In this document: one piece after another, positions 15,028-34,113 of the stretch
How the letters are laid out: the number at the start of each line of letters is the position of its first letter
Position numbering within the stretch: the first letter of the stretch is position 1
Assembly: GCF_001194135.2 (NCBI RefSeq)
Contig: NC_068983.1
Span: 137,441,317-137,505,316, forward strand
DNA: 64,000 nucleotides
Direction of reading: 5' to 3'
DNA from: Octopus bimaculoides
Taxonomy: Eukaryota
Notes under the pieces: model-generated
The model's database searches: none
The model's input: only the letters and a program-made list of their open reading frames with translations
Told to the model about the DNA's origin: nothing
Position numbers and translations under genes: made by a program

Positions 15028-15077
<50 letters not shown>

Positions 15078-17031
15078 GGAATTTCATCTTCTAGATGCTA
15101 TTAAGGAATTTTCTTATCAAATACTCAAATACTCTCTTATATATGGCTACGATGCATCAATTTTTAGAATTTTTTTGATCAGACTATGTAAATTTAAAGT
15201 TTCATCATACACTCATACATGCAGTATCCTATCTGTAATACAGTTGCATTAGATTGTGCAGCAGTTTTTTTTTTTTTTGTTACATTCAGGAATAAAAATG
15301 TGCATTTCTGGCATATATGATATTCATGTATATACCTACAGTTACTCTTTTTCCACCTCCCTAATATCCATTTCTGATTTTTCTGTCATCATTGTCCTCT
15401 TTCCAAATTCAGATATCTTGATTTTTGTGTTCTCAATACCCAAAGGTTTTGGTCTCTACTCTGCAATAAATTATCTCCTTTGCATTGCTTAGCAATTGTG
15501 TGGTTCTAAATAGCAATGTTCATGTAATTGGAAAAAGTATTTGGTGTTCTATTTTCCTCATCAGAGCTTTCCGTTTTACAAGAAGATGAATGTCCAGTTT
15601 GACAGTGAATCATCATCTTCATCATCATTTAATTTCCGTTTTCCATGATGGCATGGGTTGGACAGTTTTACTCAAAACTGGTAAGCCAGGGAGCTGCACC
15701 AGGTTCCGATCTGAATTGGCAAAATTTATACAGCTAAATGCCCTTCCAAATGCCATTGTTTTGTTTTTTGTCTGAGATTCCAAGGGCTTGGCACCTTTAT
15801 AATAGGAAGATCATTTTACAACATACATTTAAATATAATGAAAGTCTTTCCAGAGATGTAACTCCACATAAAAATTCTTGAGATTAAGTTTGTGGACACA
15901 TTTTATTTTAGAGCATGGAAGACAGTGATTCGGAATCACATAAACCGTTAACTTCACTTAATCATTTATTAGTTTCAACAGTCTTCATTTGATATCCAGT
16001 TGCAACACTGAATTACAATGGAATTTTGTCAGTGACTAGGTTGCAGATGATGAGATGAAAATTTTGATACCAAATAAGTGATGAAGTATGTAGTTAAGAA
16101 GCTTGCTTCCCAACCATTCAGTATTGGGTTCTGTCCCACTACTCTACACCATGGGCAAGTGTCTTCTACTTTCGCCTTGGGTCGACCAACGTCGCTTGTG
16201 GGTTTGGTAGGTGGAAACTGAAAGAAGTGCATCGTGTGTGTACCATTGTCTAGACCTCACATGATGGTTGTACATAAGCATCATCGTCACCTATGAAAAA
16301 CATGTCTGGCTATGAGAACATATTTCCTTGCTTGGAAACATGAAGAATGGCGACAAGAAGGGTATTTGGCCACAGAAAAATCTACCTCAACAAATTCCCT
16401 CTGACTCATACTAACATGGCAAAGCAGACGTTAAATTATACACACATTGTTATATTATCACGGAATTGTTTGGGATTGTATAACGTTTATTTTGTGTATC
16501 ATGGGGTACAAAAATAAATTTTAATGTTACCAGATATAACATATTTGATCTCTATACAATTAAACACATTTTAAAGTTGACTGAGCCAAGATGAATTACC
16601 TGTGGTACCTTTCGTTGTCAACGTGGAAGTGACATTTTATTGAGTAATGTCTCCGCAGTTATTATTGGCTAGTGTAGGTTTGAAGGACAACAGGTACAAA
16701 ATTGCAACTATCAGGGAATATGGACGTTGTAGATCTTTTATTCCATAATGGATACAAAAATAACTTCATTATCTCAGCACATCCGATGTGCTGGTCTGAA
16801 TAGGTTTTGTGTAATGTGATAAAGATAAGGGACTTTTTTTGTCTACTCAATATTTATAATGACGGGTTGTTAATCGTCTTACAGAGTAATTTGCCTCTGA
16901 ATCAAGGCAACAACAATAAATTCTGTAGCGATTTTAGTTGTGGTTATTTATATCAGTTTTCATTTCATCACCGCCTCTCACCTGTGTGTTCTACGTGAAG
17001 TTCTGTTAGTGTATGTGCCCAAACTTCACAC

Positions 17032-17041
17032 GTCACGTGAC
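17032..17041. promoter_or_regulatory. GTCACGTGAC E-box (USF/MiT-type) in the CpG-rich region upstream of V2
   Basis: Perfect 10-bp palindrome, with a second CACGTG and GCCGCCAT within 80 bp. Confidence 0.5.
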
Positions 17042-17488
17042 AGACTAGTTGCCTCATTTTGAACTAATACTGGAGCGGAGATCATATCACGTGGCTATTG
17101 CCGCCATGTCGCTTTGTTCACGACGGAGCCCCGCCACGACTAATTACTTACTACCGTTAGTAACACTAGCACCCTTACTTCCAATACCTGCTATGTTCTA
17201 ACTGCCGGGATTGGACAACTTTCACTCAGTTCAGTACGAACGTACTTTACCGAATTAGCATAGTAATGCTGTAATGAAATGAATGTGTATGTGCCCGAAA
17301 CGCACACTGCAGCTGTCAATCTATGAAATTGTAAAATTTAATAAACAAATTAACAATTCTATTTTCTGACTAAATTAAACGGTCAATATCAAAGCTAACT
17401 GTCAACTTGTGACTTTCTTAATCTCCTTTAAAAAAACCTTTTGTCAAACGGGAAGTTTTTAATTCTCCTCCGCCGTGTACTTCAACTA

Positions 17489-17665
17489 ATGGGAAGGCCA
17501 AAGAAATATGCCACCGACGAGGAGCGTCGTGCTGCAAAAGCCTTGAGAGAGAGGGATCGGAGAGAGAGAGAAACTGCAGAAAAAAGGAGCAGACGTTTGG
17601 AAAAAATGAGAACGTCTGCACTAAGGAGAAGACAGAAACGTGCTAGTGCTGGCAATGTTGCTAAG
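17489..17665 (+). CDS. Variable exon V2: AT-hook-like GRPKK plus STPR-like charged helix (59 aa), phase-0 donor
   Basis: MGRPKKYATDEERRAAKALRERDRRERETAEKRSRRLEKMRTSALRRRQKRASAGNVAK. Donor AAG|GTAAAG at 17665/17666. Confidence 0.7.
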
Positions 17666-18485
17666 GTAAAGTATTTCTTAACGTGTGTGAATGAGAGATA
17701 GGTGGAGGGGTGCGAAAGTAGTGGGTAAACCCACGGTCGTTTCCTTGGTTACTAACATGTCGAAACGGCGGAACATAGTTTATACGCTACAAGAACATGT
17801 TCAAAATTTTCTTTCAGTTACTGCTGTTTTTAGGTATTAACCTAAAGCGTTGTAGCCGTACTATCCAATCAATATATCGTTTAATAGACGTTAGAATTAT
17901 CTAATAAAATAAAAGGAAATACTTTTCATATAAATTATATATTACGATATGTTGACTGGTGTGTCGCGGTTAGATTGCCTTTGTTCAATTTCCTATTTTA
18001 GCGTTTATTGAAAATCAAGAAAAATTTTACGAAGTGTGTGTTCTTGTTAGCAGCGTTTAAGCAAACTATACATTTCATTATTTCCGTTTCGGCTTTACGC
18101 GTTACTTCTGAATAGTTTTAACGAGTTAGTAAGATAAGAAACAACCATTCTCTGAAGCAAGTTAAGATTTGTGGGGAGTATAATTCTGGTTCTTTGTCTC
18201 AGTAAGATAATTTGATAGTTGGTGGTGATGTTATATCGAATACGCCGTTTTTTCCCCTCTTTTGTGTGTTTATCTGAAGCGATCACAACTACTTTGAAAT
18301 GGAATTTGGATTCCAAATAATATAGATTTTTAAACAGATTTTTCATTGTAGATTTTGAAAAATAAAATACGGCACAACTGAACCATAAGATTATATGAGG
18401 TAGGGTAATTAGTTTCTTCACTTGTATCTCACTTTTTGCGTCTTTCACCTCCTCTTACCCTTACGTAAATCGTATTTGTAAGTCT

Positions 18486-18560
18486 AAGTGAGCACACGTG
18501 ACTTTCAAAGTGAGCGCACGTGACTTTCAAAGTGAGAATAGAGACTTCAAAGTGAGGACA
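18486..18560 (+). repeat. 22-bp tandem repeat (2 near-perfect units plus degenerate ones) carrying CACGTGAC, directly upstream of V3
   Basis: AAGTGAGCACACGTGACTTTCA / AAGTGAGCGCACGTGACTTTCA / AAGTGAGAATAGAGACTTCA / AAGTGAGGACAC. Confidence 0.85.
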
Positions 18561-18609
18561 CATTTCATTTGCGTGACTTAAACAGCTTCGATAAAGTGAT
18601 TTTTTTGCA

Positions 18610-19002
18610 ATGCCTCGGCAAGCCGCATCCAGTGGACGTGGAACAAAAAAGCCGCCTGTGTCCAACGCCGCACGCAATCAACTCATAGATTGTTATGATC
18701 GTGGATCGAACTACAAGGACTTTGCTAAATCCATGGGAATTAATTTAAAGACTGCAAGCAGAATAATTTTAGACTATATAAAAACGGGCAAACGAGAAGC
18801 ATTACTCAAAGGCGGTAGATGCAATGTGAAAGTTGATGATGAGATGCGTGCCTACTTGTACGAAGCAATAAATAACAATCCATCTATCACCTTGCGGAAG
18901 ATAAATGAGGGTATGAGATTGAATTTGCCACAAAAACCACTTGTAAGCGATGGATGCATTTCACGAACTCTTGATCGCATGCTGCTAACAAGAAAAAAAT
19001 TG
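18610..19002 (+). CDS. Variable exon V3: Tc1/IS630-type transposase N-terminal bipartite HTH (131 aa), phase-0 donor
   Basis: RNQLIDCYDRGSNYKDFAKSMGINLKTASRIIL...KGGR...NPSITLRKI...VSDGCISRTLDRMLLTRKKL stops where the DDE domain would begin. Donor TTG|GTGTGT at 19002/19003 is weaker than the others. Confidence 0.75.
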
Positions 19003-20119
19003 GTGTGTAATATAAGTATTGAATTTTGTCGTAATTGTTTTTAAATGATTCTGTATAAATAGAACGAAGAAGTATCGTTATTTTCTCATTTATCAAAAAT
19101 GAATCCAAGAAATGTGGAGGGAGGGGTCGAAAAGCTTCCAAATATTTTACAAAGAAAACAGTTGGATGTTCAGTTTAATTTTTCATTTCCTTAAGAAGTT
19201 TAAAAAAAAAAAAAGAAACTAGCAACAAGCTAGTTATAACTATACTGTGGACGGCTAATTGTAGTATTTTATATATATAAATAAGGTACATAATAATCAT
19301 AGATACGAACATTCACATACTTATACATGCACACACATACTCAGAGGTTCACCGTCCCATTTCCATTGCACACACATTCACATACCTCCCTTTTACATAC
19401 ACACATACAGAGTTGAAACGCTGATTTTTTTTCTCTCACCCCTTCCTTTGTTATTCATTTATCACCCCTTACTTTCTCATATGTTGTGACGGAGAAAGAC
19501 GGAAGATACACGACGCGCTCTTTGCTACTTCCTTTCTCTCGCTCAGTCAGCGCTATTACTCTTACTTCACTGAATTACTATTTTCCCTCCTCTCCCTTCA
19601 CTTATACTACTTTTTCTCCTACTTTGTGGACAAATATATATAAAAACACTGCGGTCATTATATTAGGAGATAAATCGAAATCAGCTACATCACTGGTTCA
19701 CTCTTGCGGTATAGTTTCACATTGCAGTTTAAATTAGTTCACTTCTGTCTCTGGTGCTCATGAGACAGGCATGAACGTCATGCATACTCTTCCTGTACAC
19801 GTGCACAACTGATTATCGGCTCCGTTGTCAGTTGCTTGTTTATGATGCTAGGAAGCATCATGTATATTCCTGAATTTATGAACCTGGTCTCAGATCTTTA
19901 TTCCTTTTCTATTTTCAATCTCCAAATGGTGTGAATATTGAAATTAAAAACTAAAATAATTATCGATTTATGTAAACTAATTCAAATGCCTTTTTTTTTT
20001 TTTTTAGCTCAATTTTTGTTTGAATTCCATAGGTAAACGTATTTTGTGTTTCGAGAGTAGTTGGAAGTTTGTGCCAAATAAGCAAGAGAGCACATTATAA
20101 AAAGCAGGAGTGGGAGTTG

Positions 20120-20128
20120 GCGCATGCG
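20120..20128. promoter_or_regulatory. NRF1-like GCGCATGCG motif upstream of V4
   Basis: About 100 bp upstream of the V4 ATG, with TATAAAA about 25 bp further upstream. Confidence 0.45.
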
Positions 20129-20229
20129 TATCGTTTATTTGGCCGACATATCTCTATTCTTCGCTGGAATATTTTTCTATCTTAATACTTCTTTCTTTAT
20201 TATTATTCATATTATTTCATACTGTAGTC

Positions 20230-20565
20230 ATGCCAGCTTGTGTTGTGGTAGGTTGTAAAGTAAGGGCTACCAAAGAAAATTCTGCGCTCGGCTTGCGGTT
20301 GCATAGATTCCCGCGAAACCCTCATCGGCGTCAGTTGTGGGTAAATGCTATAAACAGGCCAGACTGGATTGCTAGCGACAACGACCGTATCTGTGGCTTG
20401 CATTTCCACAGCCGATACCCCGTTCGTAATACAGCCAGTATTGATTATGTCCCTACAATATTTTCATCAAGGCCACAGGATGAATCTAACTTTGTTACCG
20501 AACAAAGACTGAAATGTTTCAACACTGTAAACAACAGTGCCACGAGATATCCTGATAATGTGATT
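20230..20565 (+). CDS. Variable exon V4: THAP domain (112 aa), phase-0 donor
   Basis: MPACVVVGC...HRFP...LWVNAI...ICGLHF...VPTIF has a complete C2CH signature. Acceptor CTGTAG|TCATG; donor ATT|GTAAGT at 20565/20566. Confidence 0.9.
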
Positions 20566-21557
20566 GTAAGTTTGTTGGGTTCCATGTTATACGATCATGT
20601 AATGTCATTTTTAAGTCAGGGATTTCATTTGGAAAGTTCTTTTTTTTATCAGTTACGCAACTTTATTTTTGTCATGTACTTTTCTATACCCTTGTTTAAT
20701 GTAAAGGGCTTATCTAGTTTTATAATTAAATAATATGCCGCTCACATCACTAACTTTAATAGGCAGTATAGTGACATCCACCAACTTACAATAAAGTATA
20801 AAATTTACTAATTGCTGCACATAATTAGAGAAATAAGTTGGTTAGATTGCATTAGCCTATGGATGTGACTGCTATTTCACACACAAGCTCCTTCAATTGA
20901 CTCGATCCACTTTGCAGTTTCCTCTTAAAATCTTTTGCAAGGGATGTGCCATACCTCATAAAGTTTCCTTATCTGTTTAAATTCTTGGATTTAATTACTT
21001 GTCCTATAAAGTTGATCTATGTCTTGTATATCCTATAATTGTCGGTTACTTTTGCAGAATACCCTAACACAATAGTTATCTGATTTAACATAAACCCAGC
21101 AAATATGAGGGGAGTGGTTTAGTCGATACCATTGACAGTATGAATGAAAATGTAATATGTATTCTATAAATATATTACTATTCTTCTTCCTTTCTTACAA
21201 TTTAAATACTGCTGTTTGAATTTAAGATTTTAAATACAAACGAAATATACATTCATACACTTAATATTTATATGTACATTGCCACAAGTTAAGTTGAAAA
21301 TATGTAGGAAAGTAATACAATATTAAACTTTACAACTCACATCATTCTGTTATTGAAAGCGAACGAGTATACTATATTAAAGCTTTCGTTGTAGTTTATC
21401 TATCCGGGTATGTTTGTTTTTTGTTTTTCTGTTGTTTTTTTTAGAATTTTAGTTCATTTACGAAGCTAAAATATTGGTTGATCTTTTCAAATTACAAGTT
21501 ACATTTTTAGACGATTTAATAAATCGTCTGTTGTGGCCTTAAAGCAAATCCATTACT

Positions 21558-21840: not shown

Positions 21841-21861
21841 TTGCGCAAATTAGTGACGTCA
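21841..21861. promoter_or_regulatory. Adjacent C/EBP-type (TTGCGCAA) and CRE (TGACGTCA) palindromes
   Basis: TTGCGCAA at 21841-21848 and TGACGTCA at 21854-21861, upstream of the decayed THAP at 22027. Confidence 0.5.
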
Positions 21862-22220: not shown

Positions 22221-23517
22221 TCGACGAAGAAACAGCCTCTAGTAAAAGTACAGTTATGTCGCCGTCAGGAAAGAAAAGTTACAGCCGCTCCATGTAGGTG
22301 ATGACCAGTCAACATACTTGTGTTAGGCGCCTACGTTCTACTCCTGTTTTGTAATGACTCATTATTCGTGGACAGAATCATTTTATTTTAGGCTACTTTT
22401 CCAGAATTCCCGTCTTTTCAATCAATTCTAATTTTTTAGATTCCTCTTCAACATCTATCTCATGAGACTGCATTCAGGAGATACTGTAAATTTTTTTAAT
22501 TTGGACGTTCAAATTTTGGCTGCTGTTAAAGCATATAGAGCAGCAAACACTATTAGGATGCTTTTTTTTGGGGGGGGGGTAATAGAAGAAGTGTATTGTA
22601 TTGAACATTAGATGTGTTTATCTAGAGCTTCAAACGGAATTTAAGTGTAAATATATAAATAATTTTAACATTTTTGAAATAGTTTATGCACCCTGAAATT
22701 AATGTGCTAAACCACTACTGTAATAGATGGGATGGTGGGGGGGGGGGGTCAAGCTGTACGTCATAAGTAGTAGAGAGACTGAATTCAAGATCTGCTTAAA
22801 GGTGGTTGCTTTCGTGTATGTATGTGTGTGTGTATATATAAATTTGTATAAACTGTCTGGCGTTGAAGCAGGCTATTTTCTTTTAGTGAGTACTTTACCA
22901 TCGTTGTTAGTCAAGTTATTCTACAAGTCAAATTTTTAAAAAATATGAAATGAAAAATAAACGGAAATGGATATTCATTCGGGGTATAGTTACTGCGTTC
23001 ATTAAGAGTACATTGTTGTATAGATGTATGTTTATGCATACCCAGGTAACGTAAGATACGTCTAGATAGAGTTGTTTTGTTAATGTATCTTTCATTTTTA
23101 TTGAAATTTCAGTTTTTACGGTATTCGGTTTTGTTTAAAAGAAATATATTAGGCAGTAAATATTCGAAGAAGAAAATTAATAACGGGAGACAGCTTTGTA
23201 GGCCACCATCTTTAATGCGAATTTAGATAATGCGATTTAGTGAGTGTATCTGATTTTTCTATCTCCTACTTTTCTCTTAGCTGTAATGTGAAATGTTGGT
23301 TTTATTTCGGGGCGGGAGGTGGGAATGAGTGGAAGAGGAGAGAGAGAGAGATCAGTTGGCGCGTGTGGCCTTGTGGGAAAGAAGTTTAGATTGCTTGGTT
23401 ATCTAGCGTTCCTAGATTTAGAACACCACTGCTAAGTTAGTCTATCCTGCCGGTTACTTGTTAGTGTTTTGCATTTTCCTCGTATTGTCTGTTTTTGCAT
23501 ATGTTTATCATCGCGCC

Positions 23518-23970
23518 ATGTCTTTACGTACAGCTTCTAGTTCTTTTACGAAACGTAAACGAACCTATTTGACATTAGAGACCAAGTTAGAGATTCTTGG
23601 ACGGGCCGAATCTGGAGAAGGTTCATCTGCATTAGGCCGTATGTTCGGTGTTGGAGAGAGCACTATTCGTTCGATAAAAAAAAATGCTGACAAAATAAAG
23701 AATTCCGTGTTATACTCCTCGCCGTTTTCTGGAACGGTAACCAGGATAGGGAATACCGCGTTAAAAAGAACTGAAAAGGTGCTTGGAACTTGGATAACGA
23801 AACAGCTACAAAACAAGAAGTTTAGCCTCAGCACGATATGTATTAGAGACAAAGCACTGGCTATTTACGAGCGTTTTGTTCAAGACCAGGGTGGAAGTTA
23901 CGAACCTTTTGTTGCTAGTAAAGGATGGTTAAACAATTTTCTAAAGCGTACAGGCTTTGATTCGTTAAAG
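23518..23970 (+). CDS. Variable exon V5: CENP-B/pogo (Tigger-type) psq-HTH plus Tc5-HTH (151 aa), phase-0 donor
   Basis: KRKRTYLTLETKLEIL...GVGESTIRSIKKN...IRDKALAIY...FVASKGWLNNFLKR, truncated before the DDE domain. Donor AAG|GTAAAT at 23970/23971. GC-box at 23309. Confidence 0.92.
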
Positions 23971-24234
23971 GTAAATTCCATTAATACTCGTTTAATTGTC
24001 AAATATCGTTGCATGTTTGCATGATAATTTCAACGAATGCCCTTTTTTTTTTCCATAACTATATTTCGTACGTTTCCGGATATTTCCGGAGTAACCTCCC
24101 CACTCGTAATGACATCACTTTAGTGCAACACTGTCGCCATCTTTGTGTGATCTCTGTTAGTTAAGATTTACAGCAGTTCATGTAAAAAGAGAAAAAAGTC
24201 CATACTCTTAGGATTGAAATTTAAATGGTAGCAA

Positions 24235-24546
24235 ATGGTTCACTGTGTTGCTTTCGGTTGCAGTAATCAAACAGGAAGTGGTAGAAGTTTTTTCCGCTTT
24301 CCTGACAGCAACACAAGGCCACATATATACAAGGAATGGTTATCAAGGGTTAATCGGGCAGAATTTATCCCTTCGAAATACTCTAGTTTGTGTTCGGATC
24401 ACTTCGAACGAAACTGCTATGTAAAAGACCCTAATTTACTCAAGCACTGGGGCATCAAAATAAAACAACGACTTAAACCAGACGCGGTACCAACTATCTT
24501 CAACTTCAAACCAATCCGACGACGAGGAGCGAAGAAGCGGTTTGAG
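24235..24546 (+). CDS. Variable exon V6: THAP domain (104 aa), phase-0 donor
   Basis: MVHCVAFGCSN...FFRFP...EWL...LCSDHF...RLKPDAVPTIF followed by basic RRRGAKKR. Donor GAG|GTAGAT at 24546/24547. YY1-like CGCCATCTT at 24135. Confidence 0.9.
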
Positions 24547-24905
24547 GTAGATACAATAAAAATATCACTTGTATCGGTCGTGTGATGTAACCTGGCTTGA
24601 TTACAAATTTAGCGAGCGCATTTAGTTTCGTCATTCCGTACATATTTACATTTCTTAATTAGAAATGTCTTACTTTTTTTCTTTCTCTCCTTTGTTTTTT
24701 TACTTTCGGATTTTTTTTCATATTTTAGCTGCTTACCTTTTTTTTTCATATTTTGTCAACGACTTCTGCAGTTGCATCCCTTGGACGTCACGTGATAGGT
24801 GAAGGCATAGTCATTTCCGTTCAGTTATCATAAATTCTTGTTTGCCTGCCTTTTTGGAGGGTTGCCTAACGAGCTTGGTTCGTGTCGTTTATATATTTTT
24901 TAATA

Positions 24906-25280
24906 ATGGAGCCTACTTGCAAGGCAAAGTGGTGGTGTATTGTACATCAGTGTAGCTCTGATTCGCGCAAGAATGTTAGTCTCTATCCATTCATGCGTGG
25001 TGTTCGCTTTTTCCCCTTTCCTACTGCCAAGAAAGATCCGTACATGCGTCAACTTTGGACGCAGCTAGTAAGACGTGGTGACAACTGGGATGGTCCAAAA
25101 AAACATCATCGCGTTTGCTCTAGACACTTTAAAGATGGAGAGCCTAGCCCTCAAAATCCTGCTCCGACTATTTTCCCATGGACACCTGCTCAAACAATCT
25201 TTCCTAAAATTGATTTTAGAGCTCGGGACAGTAAAAAGCTCTATGGTGGTAAAGCCACTTTGGAGTTTCCTCTTCCTCAA
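24906..25280 (+). CDS. Variable exon V7: THAP domain (125 aa), phase-0 donor
   Basis: WCIVHQC...FFPFP...LWTQLVRR...VCSRHF...PAPTIFPW. Donor CAA|GTAAGT at 25280/25281. GTCACGTGA at 24787. Confidence 0.9.
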
Positions 25281-25454
25281 GTAAGTTTTTCTTTTACCAC
25301 TTGAGTGTCTTAAACTAGGCTTTATTGGATTCTACTAAATATTTCATATCCTGCATATATCAGCGATTCTTATATTTAAGGTATTGCAAGTGTTTACGAA
25401 TGTCCGTTATTTTTCTTTTGATTTATCGATTGTAGGAACTTGGCTTGCCTTCCA

Positions 25455-25466
25455 TGCGCATGCGCA
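25455..25466. promoter_or_regulatory. Perfect NRF1 palindrome TGCGCATGCGCA
   Basis: Exact consensus; the palindrome extends to ATGCGCATGCGCAT. Confidence 0.55.
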
Positions 25467-26147: not shown

Positions 26148-26280
26148 ATTCGGTAAATTTTCAGATTAACACCCGCATGATTTTCACTAGGAGGTTAGGG
26201 TTAGGGAATTCCGTCCCTAACGGTAACTCTAACACCCTAGTGAAAGTCGTACGGTTGTTAATCTGAAAATTTACCAGATA
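26148..26280. mobile_element. Small MITE with ~40-bp TIRs and internal TTAGGG units
   Basis: GGTAAATTTTCAGATTAACA...TTTCACTAGG is inverted with CCTAGTGAAA...TGTTAATCTGAAAATTTACC. Confidence 0.7.
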
Positions 26281-27587
26281 TTCTTGTATTCTGTTGAGTG
26301 TGCGGCCTGTAATGTAATCCTAGACTGATAAAAGATGGAGCAGTCATTTTTATTAGCATGGTAATATGTAATCCCGATTTGGATCCTATGTTAAAATGAA
26401 TACATTGAAAAACAATGGAGAAATTTTCAGCTGATTAAGGAGTTTACAATTGCATAAAAGCTACAACTGAAGTGTAACACTTGTATGTGTACACCAAGCT
26501 AAATATTTTACTCGTTGTGGACATTCTTTACCACTCCAAATCATTTTCTTATTACCCTTTTCAAAGTTCATTCACTTGAAATATCTTCCTGGCTTCATTA
26601 TACTTATTTCTTTTACCCTGTGAAGATTAATTTTGCACTTAGACAAATCGGTAAATGTTATTGTATTATAGTATTCTTGTTTAAACATTTGAAATTGACA
26701 GTAGAAATTTTTAAATTGATTAATTATCAGTACTTACTGCCACCACCTCGGGCAAATATTACCTGTATTTATACACATTGTTGAACATGTCTCTTTCGCT
26801 TCACTCCTTTTATTGCTGCTCCTGTTTTGTCGTGTGTGGAGATATGTTGTTCTCACTACAATTTTCGAGCATTCTTGAGCAATTTAACACTACAAAGTGC
26901 CTTGCTGTTTTTTCTACTGCAATTTAGAAACATTTGATAAAAAGGATTTGCGTTTTGTTCAAATTATTCGTTACTATGTGGAGTTGACAGCGAGAAAACA
27001 AGCTACTGACTAATAAAAGCCCGAAAGAAACTGATCGATACTTTCACGTTGCTGAAGCTTGTTATAAATAAACATAACGTAGATGTTGTAAATAAGTGAT
27101 CTGCATATATCTTAAGATAAATACTCTGGGTTTTAGGGTGTAACGGAAGTTGAATCTTTTTCTCTCTCTCATCGGACAACGTGGTCAAATGTGTCTTTAA
27201 AATATGTAACTGCAATGATTACTACAGCAGCTTTCGGCTGTTTTTAATCAACTGCAAAATCAGACAAAACTTTTAAAAAATTAGTTGCGTCTGGTTCGGT
27301 GTGTGTATATATCGACAGTGCCGAGTTGGAAGATGTTTATATATAAATATTTTTTTTCTTGGTGTATGCACTTCAAGTTAAGTGGCATATGTTGTTTTTC
27401 AGTAATCTAAAGAATTGTGAATATTCTTTTAATAATGTACTTCAGCTCCCATCACAAAAACTGCTACCCTTGATATTTTTTCCACTATTCAACATCAAGG
27501 GTGGCAGGATGCAATAGAACAGTAACTGTTGCTACTGACAAGCGTCCACTCAGTCACACTGCAAGCGTGCGGTACAAGCTATCTTGA

Positions 27588-27626
<39 letters not shown>

Positions 27627-29007
27627 ATGGTGTTTCCTCCACCTCGTCCCCTAATTCTTTCTGGCATTGGTCGAATTCCGCATTAAATACACTACTAAAT
27701 TATATTGGCATTTAACCAAAATGCATTGGTGTCTTCACCTTCGGATTTTCCACGATCTCATTCGAGATTCCTCCTCTGTGTGTCCCCGCCGGCTTTTTTT
27801 TTTCTTTTCATCAGTAGATTGCCTGAAGTTTACACTGCTGTATTAGTCAAGTTTATTTTCTTTTTAGGAGTAGAAACCAATAGTGGGGTTGGAGGGGTTT
27901 AACTACTATTTCTAGTGCCGTTAAGTGACTAAGGGCTCCCTCGTCTTTTACGTTAAGTTCAAGGATGCATCGGTTGTTTAAGCATGTTAGTGTGAAAATG
28001 ATTTATAATCCAACTTGAGAAATTGTAATGTTCTTGCAAACGAATGACTGGAGTAAGTTACGCCTCAAAGTTCTGTTTTTGTAAAAGTCTATGCTACTTT
28101 TTTGCAGGTGAGCTAGTTAGTAATCGGTAAACACCAAATTTTGTGACTGATTTATTTCAATATTTAAGAGTGTTAAATTATAAGGCACAAAAAGTGACTC
28201 TCCCCATACACAACAGAATATTTAAGATATTTTCCCTTTGCATTATGTTTATGTTTCTTCGATCTTTATTGTCTAATTTCTATTAATCTGGAGACTCTAC
28301 CCACCCCTCCCAAACTTTCATAAATCATCCGGTACATGTGCCGTGGTTCGATTCTTCTCTGCAACGCCAGTATTGAGAATGGTTCGTTTACTGGCAAGTG
28401 TTTAATTCATTTCCTCTTGTGGATTCAAAAGGAAGCCAATCACTTTTCTATTGTTTTCATTACTTTCTCATCATTTTGTAGTTTAATCAGTCTGCTAAGA
28501 ATGACTCTTGGACAATAGGAAGTCATAGTAACTATTCCTTGAGCCCATAATGCATGTTCGATGGGGGAGGGTAACTTTGTAGTTGCACGATCCAAAAAGT
28601 TTTTTTTTTTTTTTAGTGTGTTCATTGCTAGCATGCTTTCATATTATTTTCTAAATGATCTTGCTGTGTCTATTTTAAAGCGAGGTGGTTACTAGAGCTG
28701 CCTCTTCCGCAAATTCGTTCGGGTATGGGGTCGGAAATAAAAGTTCTGTGTTGTGTCTGAAGAGTACAAGGTGTATGTAAATAGAACTAGAAAAAAGTAC
28801 ACAGATATTTTGCTATTAACGCATTTTAGAAACCTTGTCCTCAAATATTTTATGTGCAATGGAATGCCAGTGGCTTATTTGCTGTCATGATGCCTATTGT
28901 ACGATGGAGACAGAAACAAAAAATAGTAAAATAGCTAACTTGCATAGCCCGCTACCTGAATCTACTACTGTATTTAGGACATGTTAAAGAGAGCTCTTTT
29001 CCTGGCC

Positions 29008-29021
29008 GTTGCCATGGCAAC
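29008..29021. promoter_or_regulatory. Perfect RFX X-box GTTGCCATGGCAAC
   Basis: 14-bp palindrome about 560 bp upstream of the V8 ATG. Confidence 0.55.
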
Positions 29022-29579
29022 ACTACTGCTACTGCTATTACTGACGTGTTGAACTTGTCTGTGTTGGTTTTCCTTATCTGACTTCTTTCCCTCCTTTCAC
29101 TGCTGCTGCTATTTCCCTCCTTCCACTGCTGCTGCTATATCTGAGTTAACAGCAGGTTTTATCATGTGTAGATTACTGTATATTTCATAGGACAAACTGT
29201 TTGTGACTACCATTATTGTCCGCCATACTTAAACAGTTTATCAAAGCGAAGTGCCTGCTTTTTTTCCCTCACTTTTTCTCTGTATATTTACCTTTGTGCT
29301 GAAAATTAAATAGGATTTGGAAAACACTCGCTGTTGTTCAATTTTTCGGGAAGTTACTGTTATCATAAGATGACGGTAATCAATAAATCCTAGTGCTACA
29401 TTTACTTTAGACAGCATAATATTCTATTCAACCTCGTGACCAGCATTTTTCAAACGTGTTTGATGTGTTTAATAGTGAATATAAATGGCTGATCTTTTTT
29501 TTCGCATTGCTGCATGGATTTGTTGAAGTTCTGATGAATATTGTGGAAGGACGAAATTTTTAACGACGTTATATACAAA

Positions 29580-29852
29580 ATGCCGGCCAATCGTCATTGT
29601 AGCTATGGTACCTGTAAAAGTGATAGCCGTTATCCTAACCGACCGCAAATGAAAGGGGTTTGGTGGATTCCATTCCCTAAACCACACAAAGACTTACCGA
29701 AGTGTCAGCGTTGGGTGAAAGCTTGCGGTCGATTATACTTCACTGTTAATAACATCAAACCATGGACATATTTATGTAGCTTGCATTTTATTGGTAAGAA
29801 CGGCCCCACTCCGGAGCACCCTGACCCTATACCGCTATTGGATTCTTACCAG
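29580..29852 (+). CDS. Variable exon V8: THAP domain (91 aa), phase-0 donor
   Basis: MPANRHCSYGTC...IPFPKP...RWVKACGR...LCSLHF...PDPIP. Donor CAG|GTTAAT at 29852/29853. Confidence 0.88.
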
Positions 29853-30363
29853 GTTAATTGATTTTTTTTGTTATATATTTTTCTTCTGTATTGTTTGCCT
29901 TTGTTTTCTAGAGACATTTTAACATCTGGTGCGATTTTATTCGATTGGATGGGTCTGCTATTCAGTAATTGGCTTCTCGAAATATATTGTTTCGCGGTAG
30001 CTTTATTCCCGATCTTCCTCTTGCTATTACCTAGCTATTAGTTGCCATGTAATAGTGTAATAGCTAGAACTATGACTACGGATGTTCTCATTGGCTAGTG
30101 CATCTCACGTGGACTTACTACTGTCGGTCAATAGTCTACTGTTCCCCATGGGAAATAAGTGTGATACAGAAAAATGGCGGTGTGAGAAATATGAGAGTGG
30201 AAGCAGCTTTTGCATCATAGTATCATTAACGTAATTCTTTACACACGTTGCTGCAGCCGATTTTTTTGCACTGTATGGTTCTATATTTAGTCAAAAGCTA
30301 GCAGTTATTGCTGATTGCTCATAGATTTCCTTATATAATTATTTCTTAATTCTGTCACTCAAC

Positions 30364-31365
30364 ATGGCGTCCAACAACCTAGGCGATTCCCAACCAGAAA
30401 CACAAAACCCTAAAGCATGTGTTTCTCCAAACCATATGAACGGTGTGGAGCTTATTGATTTAGATGAATCGTTACGAACTCAAAATATTATTAAAAGTGC
30501 TGTCAAAATTCTAAAGGACTATTGTAGGACTCAACACACAACTTTGTCTTTATTAGAGAAAAAGCCTGCTCAACAATTAAGCCGATTTCTGCAAAAGTTC
30601 TACACAGAGGTGCGCCAGGTTAGTGGTAAACTCTATGCTCGGAAATCGATGATTACGTTGCGTTACGGTTTACAGCGTCACTTCAAGAGAATGTCGCATT
30701 TAGATATTATAACAGATGACGAATTCATCGAAGCCAATGAAGTGTTCAGTGTAATTTTGATGAAATTGAGGGCAATGGGCAAGGATGCTATTAAGCGTAA
30801 GAATCCTATTACAGAGGAAGATATACAGAAAATTATGCTATCGTCAGCTCTGGATCAGGACAAACCACGAGGTTTGCAAAATAAGGTATTCATGGATTTA
30901 ATGTTGCATATGTGTAGCCGCGGGCGCGATAATCTGCGGGAGATTTCGAAACGAGACTTCAGTATTGAATTATCACCTCAGGGTCTGCAATATGTGACCT
31001 TTCGGGTTGGAGCTGAACTGAACAGCAATGGGGATCCTCATGTTAATGAAGTACGCATGTATGAAATACCCGGTAATAAATGGTGCCCGCTGACTTCTTT
31101 CAAAAAATACATTAGCCTCTTAAATCCACTCTGTGATGCTTTTTGGCAAAGAAGCAAGCAGAATGTGAATCCAGATGAAGTTCCATGGTATGATAACATG
31201 CCAATTGGTAAAAACACTCTCGGAACTCGAATGAAAGAGATTTCTCGAGAGGCTGGTTGTTCTCAGATCTACACAAATCATTGTCTGCGAACCACGCAAA
31301 TTTCTACGTTAAGGATTTATAATATGGACTTACCTCAACAATCAGGAATATCATATTTACTGCAG
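30364..31365 (+). CDS. Variable exon V9: Crypton-derived tyrosine-recombinase-fold domain (DUF3504/ZMYM/QRICH1/KIAA1958-like, 334 aa), phase-0 donor
   Basis: LSRFLQKFYTEVR..SGKLY..SMITLRYGLQRHF, LQNKVF..RGRDNLR, CPLTSFKKY, WY..PIGKNTLG, TNHCLR. Donor CAG|GTGGGT at 31365/31366. YY1 motif AAAATGGCGG at 30171. Confidence 0.9.
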
Positions 31366-32321
31366 GTGGGTTGGTAAAAATATTGTCAGTTTCAGGAGTT
31401 TCTCACATTTAGTATCGTTATTAAAGAGTATCACATTCTTGCTTTGTAAATATTTATGACTTAATTTGTTTTTGTATTTTTGTTTTATCATGAAACTTTT
31501 TTTTTCTTTATAATTTTGTTTAATAATTGTGTGTGTGTGTGTGTGTGTATATAATTACATACAGAATAACGTGCTCACAAATTAAAGAAGAGTTGTTTTA
31601 TTATATTCGGGAGCGGCAGAGCTATTCTATTTCGATCGGTGGTGGGTTTGTTCACAACTTGGTTGGAAATAAAATCACTAATTAAATTATATAGTGCGAC
31701 GTTGTCAAAGCTTTTCTCTGGTCCCTTGCAGCTTCGTGCACTTGCCAGTTGGCGTAGGATTACATGTTGTTTTCTGTGTTGTTCGGTTGTGCGTAAGATT
31801 GTTAAAGGAGTTTCACCTTCTAGGGCTGAAAGGACTTTTCTTCGCTATTGTGGTTGACGACTGACCTGTCTCGGTGTTAGGTTTGTCACAATGAAGAGAC
31901 GTAGGTAGCATATCCTTTCTAATATCTTTCTGTTGGTCGGTCGTCAGTAGCTGATCTCTTATCGTATTGGTTGTTCAGACTGCTTTCTTTGCCAGTGGAC
32001 AAGTCACAGCAGCAGTCTTCCTACTAGAGAACTAGTCTTCCTTTCTATCTAATAGCATACCCACTCACTAATTCATGAACACGAGGTTCACAACCTGCCG
32101 CCATTTTAATGTTCTCGTTTTTATGGAATATTTTCAATGTTTATTTTTTTTTTTTCATTCCGCCCGTCCCAGCTTCTACACTTTTTATTTTGATTTCCCT
32201 CCATTCTTCATCAATCTAGTTTTTCACCGTTCAGTTGCAGCTTCCGCCCCACCCCCTTCTCTCCATTCAATAAGTAAAGCTTCAATCGCCCGCTGCAGTA
32301 AAGCAAATTTTGTAATTTGTG

Positions 32322-32774
32322 ATGGTTTTTGTTCGGAAGTTTAAGGGCCCATCTTCTGAGGATAGTGTTCAGTGCCCTGTTCGATCGTGTTCAACTGTAT
32401 TAAGTAAATTTCGCAACCTACCGAAGCATTTACGTTCGAAGCACAGGTTTAATGAGCCTATCGTGAAATCGATTGTAAGTCGAATCAGGAATTGTGTTAA
32501 GGGCATTGAGGATTTTTGTGAAGGAAATCTACCGGAGAAAGTCTGGTCGAATAGTAGCAGCAGTTCTAGTATATTTCATGCCGATGACAAATTTGAACAG
32601 TCTGTCGTCAACAGTGTCAGATTTCAGAATGAGACGAGTGTGACGTCCAGCTCCACCCTCACTACAACCTCGGAATTCCACGGAGATTCTCCGTTCGGGT
32701 TGCTTCGGAATGTTTGTGATAATACGATTCGCCACATACCTTTGCCGCTGATCGATTACATTAAACTGCCCCTG
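32322..32774 (+). CDS. Variable exon V10: single C2H2 zinc finger plus Ser-rich linker (151 aa), phase-0 donor
   Basis: CPVRSC-x12-HLRSKH (C-x4-C-x12-H-x4-H). Donor CTG|GTAAGT at 32774/32775. GC-box CCGCCCC at 32244. Confidence 0.8.
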
Positions 32775-33056
32775 GTAAGTGGTCAAGGATATATATATAA
32801 TATTCATCTGACAGCTTAAATATTGAAATTTAATAATTTCAAAATAATTACTTTACTTCGTAATTCAGATTCTGTTGACACAATCTTCAGTAATATTGCT
32901 GTTGTGTTTATCTATTTTTAAATTTAAATTTTCTATTGTGTAAATCTTTGGGTTGATAAGATGATGGCAGTTACAAATCAACAGACTTCGATTACCTTTT
33001 AACTCCGAAACAATTTTTATATAGGACGCTTGTCTTTGAATTTGAATTTAAGGAAA

Positions 33057-33416
33057 ATGGAGAATACAGAGGGTTTCCTGTTTAATAACAACACGACGTA
33101 TAGCACCGGTGTCCTAGCACAGAAAAGTAGTGTTCATTTCATCCCCAAAAGTGTTAGGTATACGAAATCGTCGCTTAGTTCTTTGAACGAGCTCCAGAGA
33201 ACCTATCCTTGGTTACTGGTACAGTTGCGTCCAAACCAAAATCCGTTAGCTAGCTGTGCTGTCTGCCAGAAGTATTGGTTCTCCAGCACTAGGTCTGCTT
33301 TAAAAAATGCTTGGGTCCAAGGTAGTGTTGACTTGGGATCCAGCCATAGGAAAAGTAAACTTCTTCTGCACGAGAAATCTGAACTACATTCCAAGTGTAT
33401 AGCACGAAGTTTAAAG
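33057..33416 (+). CDS. Variable exon V11: hAT-type TTF-like zinc finger (120 aa), phase-0 donor
   Basis: YPWL...CAVC...W...SKLLLHEKSELHSKC. Acceptor TTTTATATAG| at 33024; donor AAG|GTAAGT at 33416/33417. Confidence 0.8.
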
Positions 33417-34113
33417 GTAAGTAATTTTTGTGGTGAAGTAATTTCAATTAGGATATTAAGAATGGTCGACTTTAGTTTACATTAACATATTTTTATGACA
33501 ACTTACATATATATGTATTTTTATTGCTTAGAGAGCTACCGTTCTCTGCTTTTTCCTCACTATTTCTCTCTACTCTTTTATTAGCTGGTTTGGAACTTAG
33601 ATTTATTCTCCATTGCACTATGGATGTTGACTAATTTATCTCGCTTTTGATTATGATATAAACTTCAGTTTTTCTTTATTCCAACATATTATTTTTATAC
33701 TTATGTTCAACTGTTCACGGAAAGGTGTGTCTTCAGTGAAGTATAGTGAAATAATTTACTGTTTCTACTGAAATAGTTTGTTCAGTGCTAGTTTAATAGA
33801 AATAAGTACCAGTCAGATATTGGGTCAATATCTCTCCAAAAACTTTCAGGTCTTGTGTAAGGAGACTAGCTATGAATTGGGGTGGATGTTGCGTAGCTAT
33901 TCAAAATACAATGATATTTGTATCTTTCAGTAATAGTTTAAACTAATTATTTCTTATTGAATAAGTGGCTACAAGAATATTCTGGGTTTGTTTTGCAAAA
34001 TAAACATATTCATTGAGATAAACAAGGCAGAGCTTAACTTGTTTTGTCATTTTAGTGCACTCTGAAGTTGCAATTATGTTATTTTTCTTCAAATAGTCTC
34101 TTTATGCTTACAG

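What the first reader, a model, noticed from the sequence alone, without database searches (positions are those of the whole stretch)
16600..33500. Variable exons sit in CpG-retaining sequence with their own promoter-type motifs, suggesting promoter choice
Seen: CpG is visibly frequent around 4.0-6.4, 16.6-33.5, 45-46 and 54-55.5 kb and scarce in 6.5-16.5 and 36-44 kb (judged by eye, not counted). Motifs lie upstream of individual exons: TCTCGCGAGA 5197, GTCACGTGAC 17032, CACGTGAC x2 about 18495-18522, GCGCATGCG 20120, TGACGTCA 21854, GC-box 23309, CGCCATCTT 24135, GTCACGTGA 24787, X-box 29008, AAAATGGCGG 30171 and GC-box 32244. Known: molluscs methylate gene bodies and leave promoters unmethylated. 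Inference: isoforms are chosen by alternative promoters with different inputs.
Basis: partly seen in the sequence, partly recalled or inferred. Interest (0 to 1): 0.7.

Follow-up and report, generated by a model that had tools for sequence, protein, structure and literature searches.

The report
Unmethylated promoter array inside octopus BTB gene
Inside a 195-kb Octopus bimaculoides transcription-factor gene, a 17-kb stretch that has escaped germline DNA methylation holds nine alternative first exons, each encoding a different DNA-binding domain and most preceded by a conserved promoter-type motif, so isoforms are most likely chosen by where transcription starts; no start site was seen directly.

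Summary
The window is Octopus bimaculoides. Gene 1 is LOC106877732, with at least 36 RefSeq isoforms and a 195-kb CDS span. CpG o/e is 0.89 in 16.6-33.5 kb but 0.15-0.22 in the flanking blocks. Against the O. sinensis orthologue, 85% of cluster CpGs are conserved (GpC 89%). Only 11-43% are conserved in the poor blocks, with 39-64% changed to TpG/CpA, which is the signature of germline methylation.

The CpG-retaining block holds nine ATG-initiated exons (THAP x4, CENP-B/Tc5, HTH, QRICH1/DUF3504-like, two unclassified). All end in phase-0 donors. Five are confirmed by exact RefSeq proteins to splice directly to constant BTB exons at 34114. At least 15 upstream-initiated isoforms skip the whole block.

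All 12 variable exons in the window lie in CpG-retaining DNA, and all 7 shared or constant exons lie in depleted DNA. Classical TSS-proximal motifs occur 12 times against 1.06 expected. Seven of 10 independent sites lie 50-250 bp upstream of an ATG (P about 1e-4), and most are conserved.

An array of alternative promoters is well supported indirectly. No TSS data could be obtained. "Different inputs" is weak because the motifs are generic housekeeping types. One exon (zf) also has a used acceptor.

The parts
4000..6400 (.). CpG-retaining island (o/e 1.18) around the HTH_psq first exon
   Evidence: conserved in O. sinensis
5197..5206 (+). TCTCGCGAGA palindrome, 734 bp upstream of the psq ATG; identical in O. 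sinensis
5931..6107 (+). Variable first exon, HTH_psq; donor GTAAGT; splices to the shared exon at 9681, not directly to constant exon A
   Evidence: Pfam; P0066 mapping; conservation
6500..16500 (.). CpG-depleted intron block (o/e 0.22; TpG/CpA 1.31/1.37; 39% of CpGs conserved, 39% changed to TG/CA)
9681..9776 (+). Shared linker exon (HFVGGNGPTRDHPDP...) used by at least 15 upstream-initiated isoforms; its first codon supplies the His of the THAP C2CH finger for split-THAP first exons
16600..33500 (.). 17-kb CpG-retaining block (o/e 0.89; 85% of CpGs conserved against 89% of GpCs) holding nine variable first exons
17032..17041 (.). GTCACGTGAC E-box palindrome in a block 99% identical to O. 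sinensis; no exon found downstream (orphan)
18495..18524 (+). Two CACGTGAC E-boxes in a 22-bp tandem duplication, 115 and 93 bp upstream of the HTH exon ATG; conserved
18610..19002 (+). Variable first exon, HTH (weak HTH_29); RefSeq isoform X18
   Evidence: P0032 exact
20120..20128 (+). NRF1-type GCGCATGCG, 110 bp upstream of the THAP-A ATG; in O. sinensis the core is shifted by one base (ACGCATGCGC)
20230..20565 (+). Variable first exon THAP-A (predicted; ATG, ORF and GTAAGT donor conserved)
21854..21861 (.). CRE TGACGTCA, conserved; orphan (1664 bp from the next known ATG)
23309..23316 (+). GC-box GGGGCGGG, 209 bp upstream of the CENP-B exon ATG; conserved
23518..23970 (+). Variable first exon, CENP-B_N + Tc5 HTH; RefSeq isoform X14
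   Evidence: (P0030 exact)
24135..24143 (-). YY1-type CGCCATCTT, 100 bp upstream of the THAP-B ATG; conserved
24235..24546 (+). Variable first exon THAP-B; RefSeq isoform X28
   Evidence: P0056 exact
24787..24795 (.). E-box GTCACGTGA, 119 bp upstream of the THAP-C ATG; conserved
24906..25280 (+). Variable first exon THAP-C; the predicted donor is the one used in the O. sinensis 129-aa model
25456..25465 (.). NRF1 palindrome GCGCATGCGC, conserved; orphan
29008..29021 (.). X-box-like palindrome GTTGCCATGGCAAC, 572 bp upstream of THAP-D; one half-site differs in O. sinensis
29580..29852 (+). Variable first exon THAP-D (predicted; ATG and donor conserved)
30171..30180 (+). YY1-type AAAATGGCGG, 193 bp upstream of the QRICH1/DUF3504 exon ATG; conserved
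30364..31365 (+). Variable first exon, QRICH1/DUF3504-like; RefSeq isoform X3
   Evidence: P0064 exact
32098..32107 (-). YY1-type CCGCCATTTT, 224 bp upstream of the ATG at 32322; conserved. The GC-boxes at 32160 and 32244 are not conserved
32322..32774 (+). Variable first exon with no Pfam domain; RefSeq isoform X15
   Evidence: P0035 exact
33023..33024 (+). AG acceptor 32 nt upstream of the zf ATG; its orthologue is used in an O. sinensis gene model that joins the THAP-C donor to it
33057..33416 (+). Variable exon, weak zf-C17orf113 match (predicted; ATG and ORF conserved in O. sinensis; the window donor is GTAAGT, but the O. sinensis alignment is gapped after the GT, so donor conservation is not shown); last exon before the CpG boundary
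34114..34349 (+). Constant exon A (common acceptor for all isoforms)
34435..34738 (+). Constant exon B (N-terminal part of the BTB domain)
35087..36151 (+). Constant exon C (rest of BTB, C-terminal tail, stop); CpG o/e 0.25
36200..45000 (.). CpG-depleted block downstream of the gene-1 stop codon (o/e 0.15; 11% of CpGs conserved, 64% changed to TG/CA)
45858..46232 (+). Gene 2 (LOC106877745) variable first exon, FLYWCH; isoform X2; local CpG o/e 0.79
54497..54934 (+). Gene 2 variable first exon, CENP-B_N + Tc5; isoform X1; local CpG o/e 1.11
   Evidence: (P0076 exact)
57602..61287 (+). Gene 2 constant exons A (57602-57801), B (57895-58189) and C (60280-61287); CpG o/e 0.16-0.26

Best explanation
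The interval 16.6-33.5 kb is an internal array of alternative promoters and first exons of one very large O. bimaculoides gene, LOC106877732. Each variable exon starts with its own ATG, encodes a different, mostly transposase-derived, DNA-binding module, and ends in a phase-0 splice donor. Transcription that starts just upstream of one exon yields a pre-mRNA whose first donor joins the first downstream acceptor, constant exon A at 34114. The chosen DNA-binding domain is thereby fused to the common BTB-containing C-terminus. Mutual exclusivity follows because first exons need no acceptor. This is the logic of the clustered protocadherin and UGT1A loci. The promoters carry CpG-type proximal elements (E-box, NRF1, YY1, GC-box). 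They are active, or at least protected, in the germline, so the whole closely spaced array (about one exon per 1.5-2 kb) has stayed free of the gene-body methylation that has eroded CpGs in the flanking introns, the shared exon and the constant exons. Shown here: exon structure, splicing to the constant exons, the methylation-type mutational signature and its boundaries, and motif enrichment, position and conservation. Inferred: that transcription starts at each exon, that H3K4me3 or factor binding is what excludes methylation, and any isoform-specific regulation.
For: Identity and structure: P0021, P0030, P0032, P0035, P0056, P0064 and P0076 are reproduced residue for residue by variable exon + A + B + C. 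There are at least 36 isoforms. The gene CDS range is 195 kb, with no other protein-coding gene called inside the window part. At least 15 upstream isoforms splice 9776 to 34114 and skip all nine cluster exons. All nine exons keep their ORF and ATG in O. sinensis, eight keep the donor (the zf donor alignment is gapped after the GT), and in most of them synonymous changes outnumber non-synonymous ones. Methylation signature: cluster CpG o/e 0.89, with CpG conservation 85%, close to GpC at 89%; poor blocks o/e 0.15-0.22, CpG conservation 11-43%, 39-64% changed to TG/CA, TpG/CpA o/e 1.3-1.47. The landscape is the same in O. sinensis. The right boundary falls at 33.4-33.6 kb, just after the last variable donor at 33416. 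All 12 variable first exons have local CpG o/e 0.74-1.23 and all 7 shared or constant exons 0.16-0.52 (complete separation, Mann-Whitney P = 2e-5). Eight further first-exon candidates in the O. sinensis upstream cluster have 0.74-1.12. Paralogue LOC106877743, for which only one protein model was retrieved, has its CpG-retaining block at the first coding exon and a depleted body. Motifs: 12 panel sites against 1.06 expected; 7 of 10 lie within 50-250 bp upstream of ATGs, P = 1.1e-4; proximal 250 bp are 95.7% identical against 93.4% for other non-exonic cluster DNA; 11 of 15 motifs are identical in O. sinensis. Background: in O. bimaculoides, 5mC is concentrated on the bodies of a subset of genes, extends past the TTS, and is absent from promoters, transposons and most intergenic DNA (PMC9476566).
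Against: No direct TSS evidence: no transcript contigs were found for three isoforms, and the gene ranges on record are CDS-based. CpG retention is continuous rather than peaked at each exon, so it cannot by itself assign one promoter per exon. THAP-D and zf have no conserved panel motif nearby. The zf exon has an acceptor that is used in an O. sinensis model. Panel motifs are not enriched in the O. sinensis upstream cluster (2 sites) or upstream of the gene-2 exons. No shared promoter element exists. Three or four conserved motifs are orphans with no exon downstream. Pyrimidine-rich AG sites exist upstream of several exons, so absence of acceptors could not be shown.
Confidence: 0.75

Rival explanations
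1. One or a few TSSs far upstream (the gene starts about 159 kb before the window) feed all exons. The cluster exons would then be mutually exclusive internal cassette exons chosen by alternative splicing, and CpG retention would reflect something other than promoters.
For: Upstream-initiated transcripts do traverse the block. The zf exon has an acceptor used in an O. sinensis model. Pyrimidine-rich AGs occur upstream of several exons. No TSS data were obtained.
Against: Every RefSeq protein containing a cluster exon starts at that exon's own ATG. The upstream isoforms skip all nine exons. Promoter-type motifs are concentrated 50-250 bp upstream of the ATGs and are conserved. A 17-kb methylation-free hole inside a methylated gene body is unexplained under this model. 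There is no docking-site or selector-type repeat or shared element.
Confidence: 0.1
2. The block is simply in the default unmethylated state, for example Polycomb-type silent chromatin or because upstream transcripts mostly terminate before it. The motifs would then be enhancers or chance survivors in CpG-rich DNA, and only a few real promoters would serve the array.
For: Most of the octopus genome is unmethylated by default (PMC9476566). CpG retention is flat, not peaked at the exons. Orphan motifs exist. There is no motif enrichment in the other clusters.
Against: The flanking introns on both sides carry the methylation-decay signature, and RefSeq models splice across the block, so it lies within the transcribed unit. 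Motif excess was measured against the block's own CpG content. There is a positional bias towards the ATGs. The boundary coincides with the last variable donor.
Confidence: 0.1
3. Each variable exon is transcribed from its own promoter as a separate short pre-mRNA and is joined to the constant exons by trans-splicing, as in Drosophila mod(mdg4).
For: It shares the own-promoter requirement with the best explanation. The family logic (BTB plus exchangeable FLYWCH or other DNA-binding domains) resembles mod(mdg4).
Against: All variable exons lie on the same strand and upstream of the constant exons. No domain ORF is found on the minus strand. Cis-splicing is therefore sufficient and more parsimonious.
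Confidence: 0.04
4. The ORFs are relics or independent genes of DNA transposons (THAP/P-element, pogo, and so on) that inserted into an intron, and their CpG richness reflects young age.
For: The domains are transposase-derived types. A degenerate HTH ORF in two frames lies at 4573-4882.
Against: Exact RefSeq proteins join five of them to the BTB exons. None carries a transposase catalytic domain. All are intact, syntenic and under constraint in O. sinensis, and the architecture is present in Argonauta (P0039). Non-coding DNA between them retains CpG as well.
Confidence: 0.01

Closest known systems
Clustered protocadherin (Pcdh alpha/gamma) and UGT1A loci of vertebrates (variable first exons, each with its own promoter, spliced to shared constant exons)
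   Same: A tandem array of ATG-initiated variable exons that have donors but are not used as internal exons. A common downstream acceptor. Upstream-initiated transcripts skip downstream variable exons. The variable exons and promoters are CpG-rich, and their methylation state is set apart from the rest of the gene.
   Different: The product is a nuclear BTB factor whose DNA-binding domain, not an ectodomain or substrate-binding domain, is exchanged. There is no shared promoter element like the Pcdh CSE. The variable exons are not paralogues of one another but at least six unrelated domain types. The array is two-tiered, with a shared linker exon (9681-9776). The setting is a mosaic invertebrate methylome where unmethylated is the default. 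Promoter use is not demonstrated.
Drosophila lola, mod(mdg4), fruitless, tramtrack and broad (BTB factors with exchangeable DNA-binding exons)
   Same: One BTB module is combined with dozens of alternative DNA-binding modules, including FLYWCH. The isoform number (at least 36) is of the same order as lola (about 20) and mod(mdg4) (about 31).
   Different: The orientation is inverted. Here the DNA-binding domain is N-terminal and encoded by alternative first exons, so choice would be made at transcription initiation rather than by 3' alternative splicing, polyadenylation or trans-splicing. TTK-type BTB is reported to be arthropod-specific (PMC11426971). The domains are THAP, CENP-B/Tc5, psq, BrkDBD and DUF3504 rather than C2H2.
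Octopus gene-body methylation patterns MP2/MP3 of Macchi et al. 2022 (PMC9476566)
   Same: Body and post-TTS region methylated, TSS and the first part of the gene unmethylated. The CpG-depletion map of this locus reproduces that pattern, and the paralogue LOC106877743 shows the simple version.
   Different: Here the unmethylated parts are multi-kilobase holes lying up to about 190 kb inside the gene, one for each first-exon cluster.
Host-transposase fusion transcription factors; 'TE-derived TFs' counted in Octopus by Mukherjee and Moroz 2023 (PMC10027918)
   Same: THAP, CENP-B, psq and FLYWCH domains of transposase origin are attached to a host protein-interaction domain. That paper noted that octopus THAP and CENPB proteins carry BTB/POZ.
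   Different: That paper treats them as separate genes, calls BTB transposon-derived, and does not mention isoforms. Here many of them are isoforms of one locus produced from alternative first exons.

Membership tests
Variable-first-exon multi-promoter cluster (Pcdh/UGT1A type) | Tandem variable exons, each with its own start codon and a 5' splice donor | tested here: met
   Nine cluster exons, plus psq and two in gene 2, have an ATG and a phase-0 donor. ATGs are conserved in all and donors in all but zf, whose O. sinensis alignment is gapped after the GT.
Variable-first-exon multi-promoter cluster (Pcdh/UGT1A type) | Each variable exon is spliced directly to the same constant exons | tested here: met
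   Exact RefSeq matches for 5 of 9 cluster exons and 2 of 2 gene-2 exons. The other four are predicted from phase and conservation only.
Variable-first-exon multi-promoter cluster (Pcdh/UGT1A type) | Variable exons are never internal: no functional acceptor, and they are skipped by upstream-initiated transcripts | tested here: inconclusive
   They are skipped by at least 15 upstream isoforms. However, the zf exon has an acceptor used in an O. sinensis model, and acceptor scoring does not discriminate.
Variable-first-exon multi-promoter cluster (Pcdh/UGT1A type) | A separate promoter/TSS immediately upstream of each variable exon | not testable with these tools
   Only indirect evidence: motif enrichment, position and conservation and germline hypomethylation. 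No transcripts were retrievable.
Variable-first-exon multi-promoter cluster (Pcdh/UGT1A type) | A conserved sequence element shared by the variable-exon promoters (Pcdh only) | tested here: not met
   No k-mer is shared beyond chance among 20 upstream regions. Paralogous split-THAP exons show no upstream homology.
lola/mod(mdg4)-type BTB loci | A constant BTB combined with many alternative DNA-binding modules from one locus | tested here: met
   BTB lies in the constant exons; THAP, CENP-B/Tc5, psq, FLYWCH, BrkDBD and DUF3504 lie in the variable exons.
lola/mod(mdg4)-type BTB loci | N-terminal BTB encoded by common 5' exons, with variable 3' exons | tested here: not met
   BTB is at residues about 250-500, downstream of the variable N-terminus, and the variable exons are 5'.
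lola/mod(mdg4)-type BTB loci | TTK-type (hexamerising) BTB | not tested
   Reported absent outside arthropods (PMC11426971). No structural test was run here.
Mosaic invertebrate methylome: methylated gene body with unmethylated TSS | CpG depletion with TpG/CpA excess and CpG-specific decay in the body | tested here: met
Mosaic invertebrate methylome: methylated gene body with unmethylated TSS | Measured 5mC absent at the first exons and present in the flanks | not testable with these tools
Only the evolutionary footprint was measured.

The most novel reading that the evidence does not exclude
Octopods have evolved a 'reverse lola': a roughly 195-kb locus, with tandem paralogues, in which several dozen domesticated transposase DNA-binding modules are each driven by a private promoter and fused to one BTB scaffold. 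The promoter arrays would be kept as germline methylation-free holes inside a methylated gene body. If promoter choice were cell-type-specific or stochastic, as for clustered protocadherins, this would be a transcription-factor diversity generator, selected at initiation rather than at splicing, that may be relevant to the cephalopod nervous system.
Probability: 0.15. Interest if true: 0.85.

Novelty: new variant of a known kind. Interest (0 to 1): 0.55.

Why it matters
If each exon has its own promoter, this locus joins two textbook designs that were known only separately. One is the variable-first-exon promoter array (protocadherins, UGT1A). The other is the BTB factor with exchangeable DNA-binding domains (lola, mod(mdg4)). 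The decision about which DNA sequences the factor binds would then move from splicing to transcription initiation. It would also mean that part of the reported 'expansion' of THAP, CENP-B and psq transcription factors in Octopus (PMC10027918) is isoform diversity of a few loci rather than separate genes. The locus also gives a clean natural case, conserved between two species, for asking how internal promoters exclude gene-body methylation in an invertebrate methylome. The isoforms already exist in RefSeq, so the architecture is new to the literature I could search, not to the databases.

Tried and rejected
(1) A concatenated query of all variable exons against the protein collection saturated the 8000-candidate limit and returned nothing. 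This wasted one search, probably because of low-complexity words.
(2) The first search with constant exon C did not return the gene's own proteins. They appeared only in the third search, and I have no explanation for that.
Look-ups of P0021, P0030, P0032 and P0035 found no contigs, so no transcript 5' ends were obtained.
(4) The Argonauta and O. bimaculoides loci were too long to return DNA.
(5) A search for an upstream element shared by the variable exons found nothing beyond chance, either by k-mer enrichment over 20 upstream regions or by alignment of paralogous split-THAP upstream regions.
(6) Acceptor-strength scoring upstream of the ATGs did not separate real from pseudo acceptors.
(7) A search for extra coding first exons downstream of the orphan motifs at 17032, 21854 and 25456 found none with a strong conserved donor.
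(8) Minus-strand ORFs in the cluster have no Pfam domains, and there are no Rfam families or tRNAs in the window. Embedded RNA genes therefore do not explain the motifs.
(9) Aggregate CpG density around the ATGs is flat, so the idea of a discrete CpG island per exon was rejected in favour of one continuous unmethylated block.
(10) The hypothesis that CpG richness reflects young transposon insertions was rejected, because the exons are syntenic and constrained in O. sinensis and CpG is retained in the non-coding DNA between them.

Full report
WHAT THE SEQUENCE IS. The window is from Octopus bimaculoides. Stop-to-stop ORFs on the + strand give a series of DNA-binding domains in Pfam:
- HTH_psq (5871-6233)
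- a weak HTH_29 (18595-19041)
- THAP (20101-20730, 24232-24582, 24870-25301, 29538-29858)
- CENP-B_N + Tc5 HTH (23422-24021)
- QRICH1/DUF3504-like (30325-31374)
- a weak zf-C17orf113 (33003-33482)

These are followed by BTB ORFs at 34.4-36.1 kb. A second copy of the design has FLYWCH at 45.8 kb, CENP-B/Tc5 at 54.4 kb and BTB at 57.8-61.3 kb.

Database proteins identify gene 2 as LOC106877745 and gene 1 as LOC106877732. A splice model of variable exon + A (34114-34349) + B (34435-34738) + C (35087-36151) reproduces RefSeq proteins residue for residue for five cluster exons:
- 18610-19002 (isoform X18)
- 23518-23970 (X14)
- 24235-24546 (X28)
- 30364-31365 (X3)
- 32322-32774 (X15)

It also reproduces both gene-2 isoforms. 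The remaining four cluster exons (20230-20565, 24906-25280, 29580-29852, 33057-33416) are predicted. Each has an ATG and a phase-0 donor. In O. sinensis all four keep the ATG and ORF, three keep the donor (the zf donor alignment is gapped after the GT), and they are 92-97% identical at the protein level. The THAP-C donor is the one used by an O. sinensis gene model.

LOC106877732 has at least 36 isoforms and a CDS range of 195 kb, and the window begins about 159 kb into it. At least 15 isoforms start upstream of the window, pass through a shared exon at 9681-9776 and then join exon A, skipping the whole 16.6-33.5 kb block. The psq exon at 5931-6107 also goes through 9681-9776 (P0066).

THE OBSERVATION. 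CpG o/e is sharply bimodal. By block:
- 4.0-6.4 kb: 1.18
- 6.5-16.5 kb: 0.22
- 16.6-33.5 kb: 0.89
- constant exons: 0.38
- 36.2-45 kb: 0.15

GpC o/e is about 1 and G+C is 0.35-0.38 throughout. TpG and CpA are in excess (1.29-1.47) exactly where CpG is scarce.

I obtained the orthologous O. sinensis locus (L001). It is collinear with the window and has the same landscape. Aligned CpGs of the cluster are conserved as often as GpCs (85% against 89%). In the poor blocks only 11-43% are conserved and 39-64% have become TG/CA, while GpC conservation stays at 82-85%. This is the mutational footprint of germline cytosine methylation, present in the flanks and absent from the cluster.

At 300-bp resolution the retention is continuous across exons and inter-exon DNA. 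It ends at 33.4-33.6 kb, just after the last variable donor at 33416. All 12 variable first exons in the window have local CpG o/e of 0.74-1.23, and all 7 shared or constant exons have 0.16-0.52 (complete separation, P = 2e-5). Eight further first-exon candidates in the O. sinensis upstream cluster have 0.74-1.12. In the paralogue LOC106877743, for which a single protein model was retrieved, the CpG-retaining block sits at the first coding exon and the body is depleted.

This matches the published methylome. In O. bimaculoides, 5mC lies on the bodies of a subset of genes and past the TTS, and is lacking at TSSs, promoters, transposons and most intergenic DNA (PMC9476566).

THE MOTIFS. Distances to the next variable-exon ATG:

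| Exon | Motif | Distance upstream of ATG |
|---|---|---|
| HTH | two E-boxes | 115 and 93 bp |
| THAP-A | NRF1 | 110 bp |
| CENP-B | GC-box | 209 bp |
| THAP-B | YY1 | 100 bp |
| THAP-C | E-box | 119 bp |
| QRICH1/DUF3504 | YY1 | 193 bp |
| 32322 exon | YY1 | 224 bp |

Eleven of the 15 motifs are identical in O. sinensis. The exceptions are the NRF1 site at 20120 (core shifted by one base), the X-box, and the two GC-boxes at 32160 and 32244.

A fixed panel of seven classical TSS-proximal motifs has 12 sites in the cluster against 1.06 expected under a model that keeps the cluster's own dinucleotide content; none of 1000 simulations reached 12. Seven of 10 independent sites fall 50-250 bp upstream of an ATG against 1.4 expected (P = 1.1e-4). 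These proximal 250 bp are somewhat better conserved than other non-exonic cluster DNA, 95.7% against 93.4%.

The limits of this evidence:
- THAP-D and zf lack a conserved motif.
- The sites at 17032, 21854 and 25456 are conserved but have no exon downstream.
- The enrichment is not seen in the O. sinensis upstream cluster or upstream of the gene-2 exons.
- No element is common to the upstream regions.

HOW IT MOST LIKELY WORKS. The block is an internal promoter and first-exon array. Initiation at one exon gives a transcript whose only donor joins the first acceptor downstream, exon A. First exons need no acceptor, so one DNA-binding domain per mRNA follows automatically, and upstream-initiated transcripts skip the array. 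Both outcomes are seen in the RefSeq models.

The array lies deep in a gene whose introns and constant exons carry the methylation footprint, yet the array itself does not. With about one exon per 1.5-2 kb, promoter-associated protection would merge into one continuous hole, which is what is observed. The protective mechanism (H3K4me3 or bound factors excluding DNMT3) is inferred from general knowledge and was not tested here. I put this at 0.75.

The motifs are the ubiquitous housekeeping set, and evolutionary CpG retention implies germline protection. Both fit broad, constitutive promoter activity at least as well as selective choice.

RIVALS. The main rival is a single upstream TSS with mutually exclusive splicing (0.10). 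The second is default or silent unmethylated chromatin with few real promoters (0.10). Trans-splicing (0.04) and transposon relics (0.01) are unlikely.

The main caveat to a pure first-exon model is the zf exon. An O. sinensis model joins the THAP-C donor to an AG 32 nt upstream of the zf ATG, giving a 129-aa THAP-only ORF.

COMPARISON WITH WHAT IS KNOWN. The locus works like the clustered protocadherin and UGT1A variable-first-exon loci. In protein logic it resembles lola and mod(mdg4), but inverted, with the DNA-binding domain N-terminal and the BTB downstream. It fails the defining N-terminal-BTB/3'-variable feature of the lola class and lacks a Pcdh-type shared promoter element, so I do not file it as a member of either.

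No paper in the searchable library names the locus. Mukherjee and Moroz 2023 noticed that octopus THAP and CENPB proteins carry BTB, but treated them as separate genes and did not discuss isoforms. RefSeq already lists the isoforms.

VERDICT. This is a new variant of known kinds. Interest is 0.55.

Noticed in passing
window 9681-9776 (+): The shared linker exon begins with the His codon that completes the C2CH zinc finger of 'split-THAP' first exons lying upstream of the window (...VCSK|HFVGGNGPTRDHPDP). The Pfam THAP match of P0050 and P0054 runs across the junction. The same exon is also joined to non-THAP first exons (psq, CENP-B, FLYWCH, BrkDBD, DUF3504), where it is just a linker. THAP-D (29580) is the unsplit version of the same domain.
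   Followed up: partly
window 33023-33057; L001 59074-67198: An O. sinensis annotated 'gene' of 129 aa joins the THAP-C exon donor to an AG 32 nt upstream of the zf exon ATG and stops after 4 codons. This could be a THAP-only truncated isoform or an NMD substrate. It shows that at least one variable exon can be internal.
   Followed up: partly
window 23518-36148 (P0073, UniProt A0A0L8GDU7, 1402 aa): The original 2015 gene model strings six variable exons (CENP-B, THAP-B, THAP-C, THAP-D, QRICH1-like, 32322 exon) into one protein. This is very likely an ab initio artefact, and it inflates or distorts domain counts in UniProt-based surveys.
   Followed up: partly
window 17000-17100, 21854-21861, 25456-25465: Conserved promoter-type motifs (E-box palindrome in a 100-bp block 99% identical to O. 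sinensis; CRE; NRF1 palindrome) with no recognisable coding first exon or strong conserved donor downstream. They could be non-coding first exons, divergent promoters or enhancers.
   Followed up: partly
window 18487-18530: A 22-bp tandem duplication (agtgagc[a/g]CACGTGACtttcaaag) doubles the E-box upstream of the HTH exon. Both copies are conserved in O. sinensis.
   Followed up: no
window 4573-4882 (+): Two overlapping ORFs in different frames, with a DUF4817/HTH_32 match, lie inside the 4.0-6.4 kb CpG island. They look like a frameshifted Tc1/mariner-type HTH relic or a decayed variable exon.
   Followed up: no
window 47655-50949 and 11368-11802: A LINE-type reverse-transcriptase ORF is interrupted by an assembly gap (N runs at 47147-47177, 50341-50887 and 52763-52978) between the two gene-2 first exons; G+C is 0.46 and CpG o/e 0.2-0.4. 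A short RT fragment lies in the CpG-poor intron of gene 1.
   Followed up: no
window 35850-36148 vs P0002 (LOC106877741): The last roughly 97 residues of gene 1 are about 90% identical to the tandem paralogue LOC106877741, although the proteins are only 66% identical overall. This suggests gene conversion or strong constraint on the C-terminal tail (...VYPVGLFTAGGD.LPL...).
   Followed up: no
P0008 (O. sinensis LOC115209901 isoform X2): This RefSeq model fuses the N-terminal and first BTB exons of one tandem paralogue to the full next paralogue. It is either read-through transcription between neighbouring BTB genes or an annotation artefact. It bears on why the 36-45 kb region downstream of gene 1 is CpG-depleted.
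   Followed up: no
window-wide vs L001: CpG-poor (methylated) blocks are less alignable and more divergent between the two Octopus species (HSP identity 81-86%) than the CpG-retaining clusters (88-94%). The variable-exon arrays are therefore the better conserved part of the locus even outside exons.
   Followed up: partly
A search with constant exon C did not return LOC106877732 proteins that contain that exon at 100% identity; they surfaced only with a gene-2 query. This is a database or tool behaviour to keep in mind when 'no close hit' is reported.
   Followed up: no
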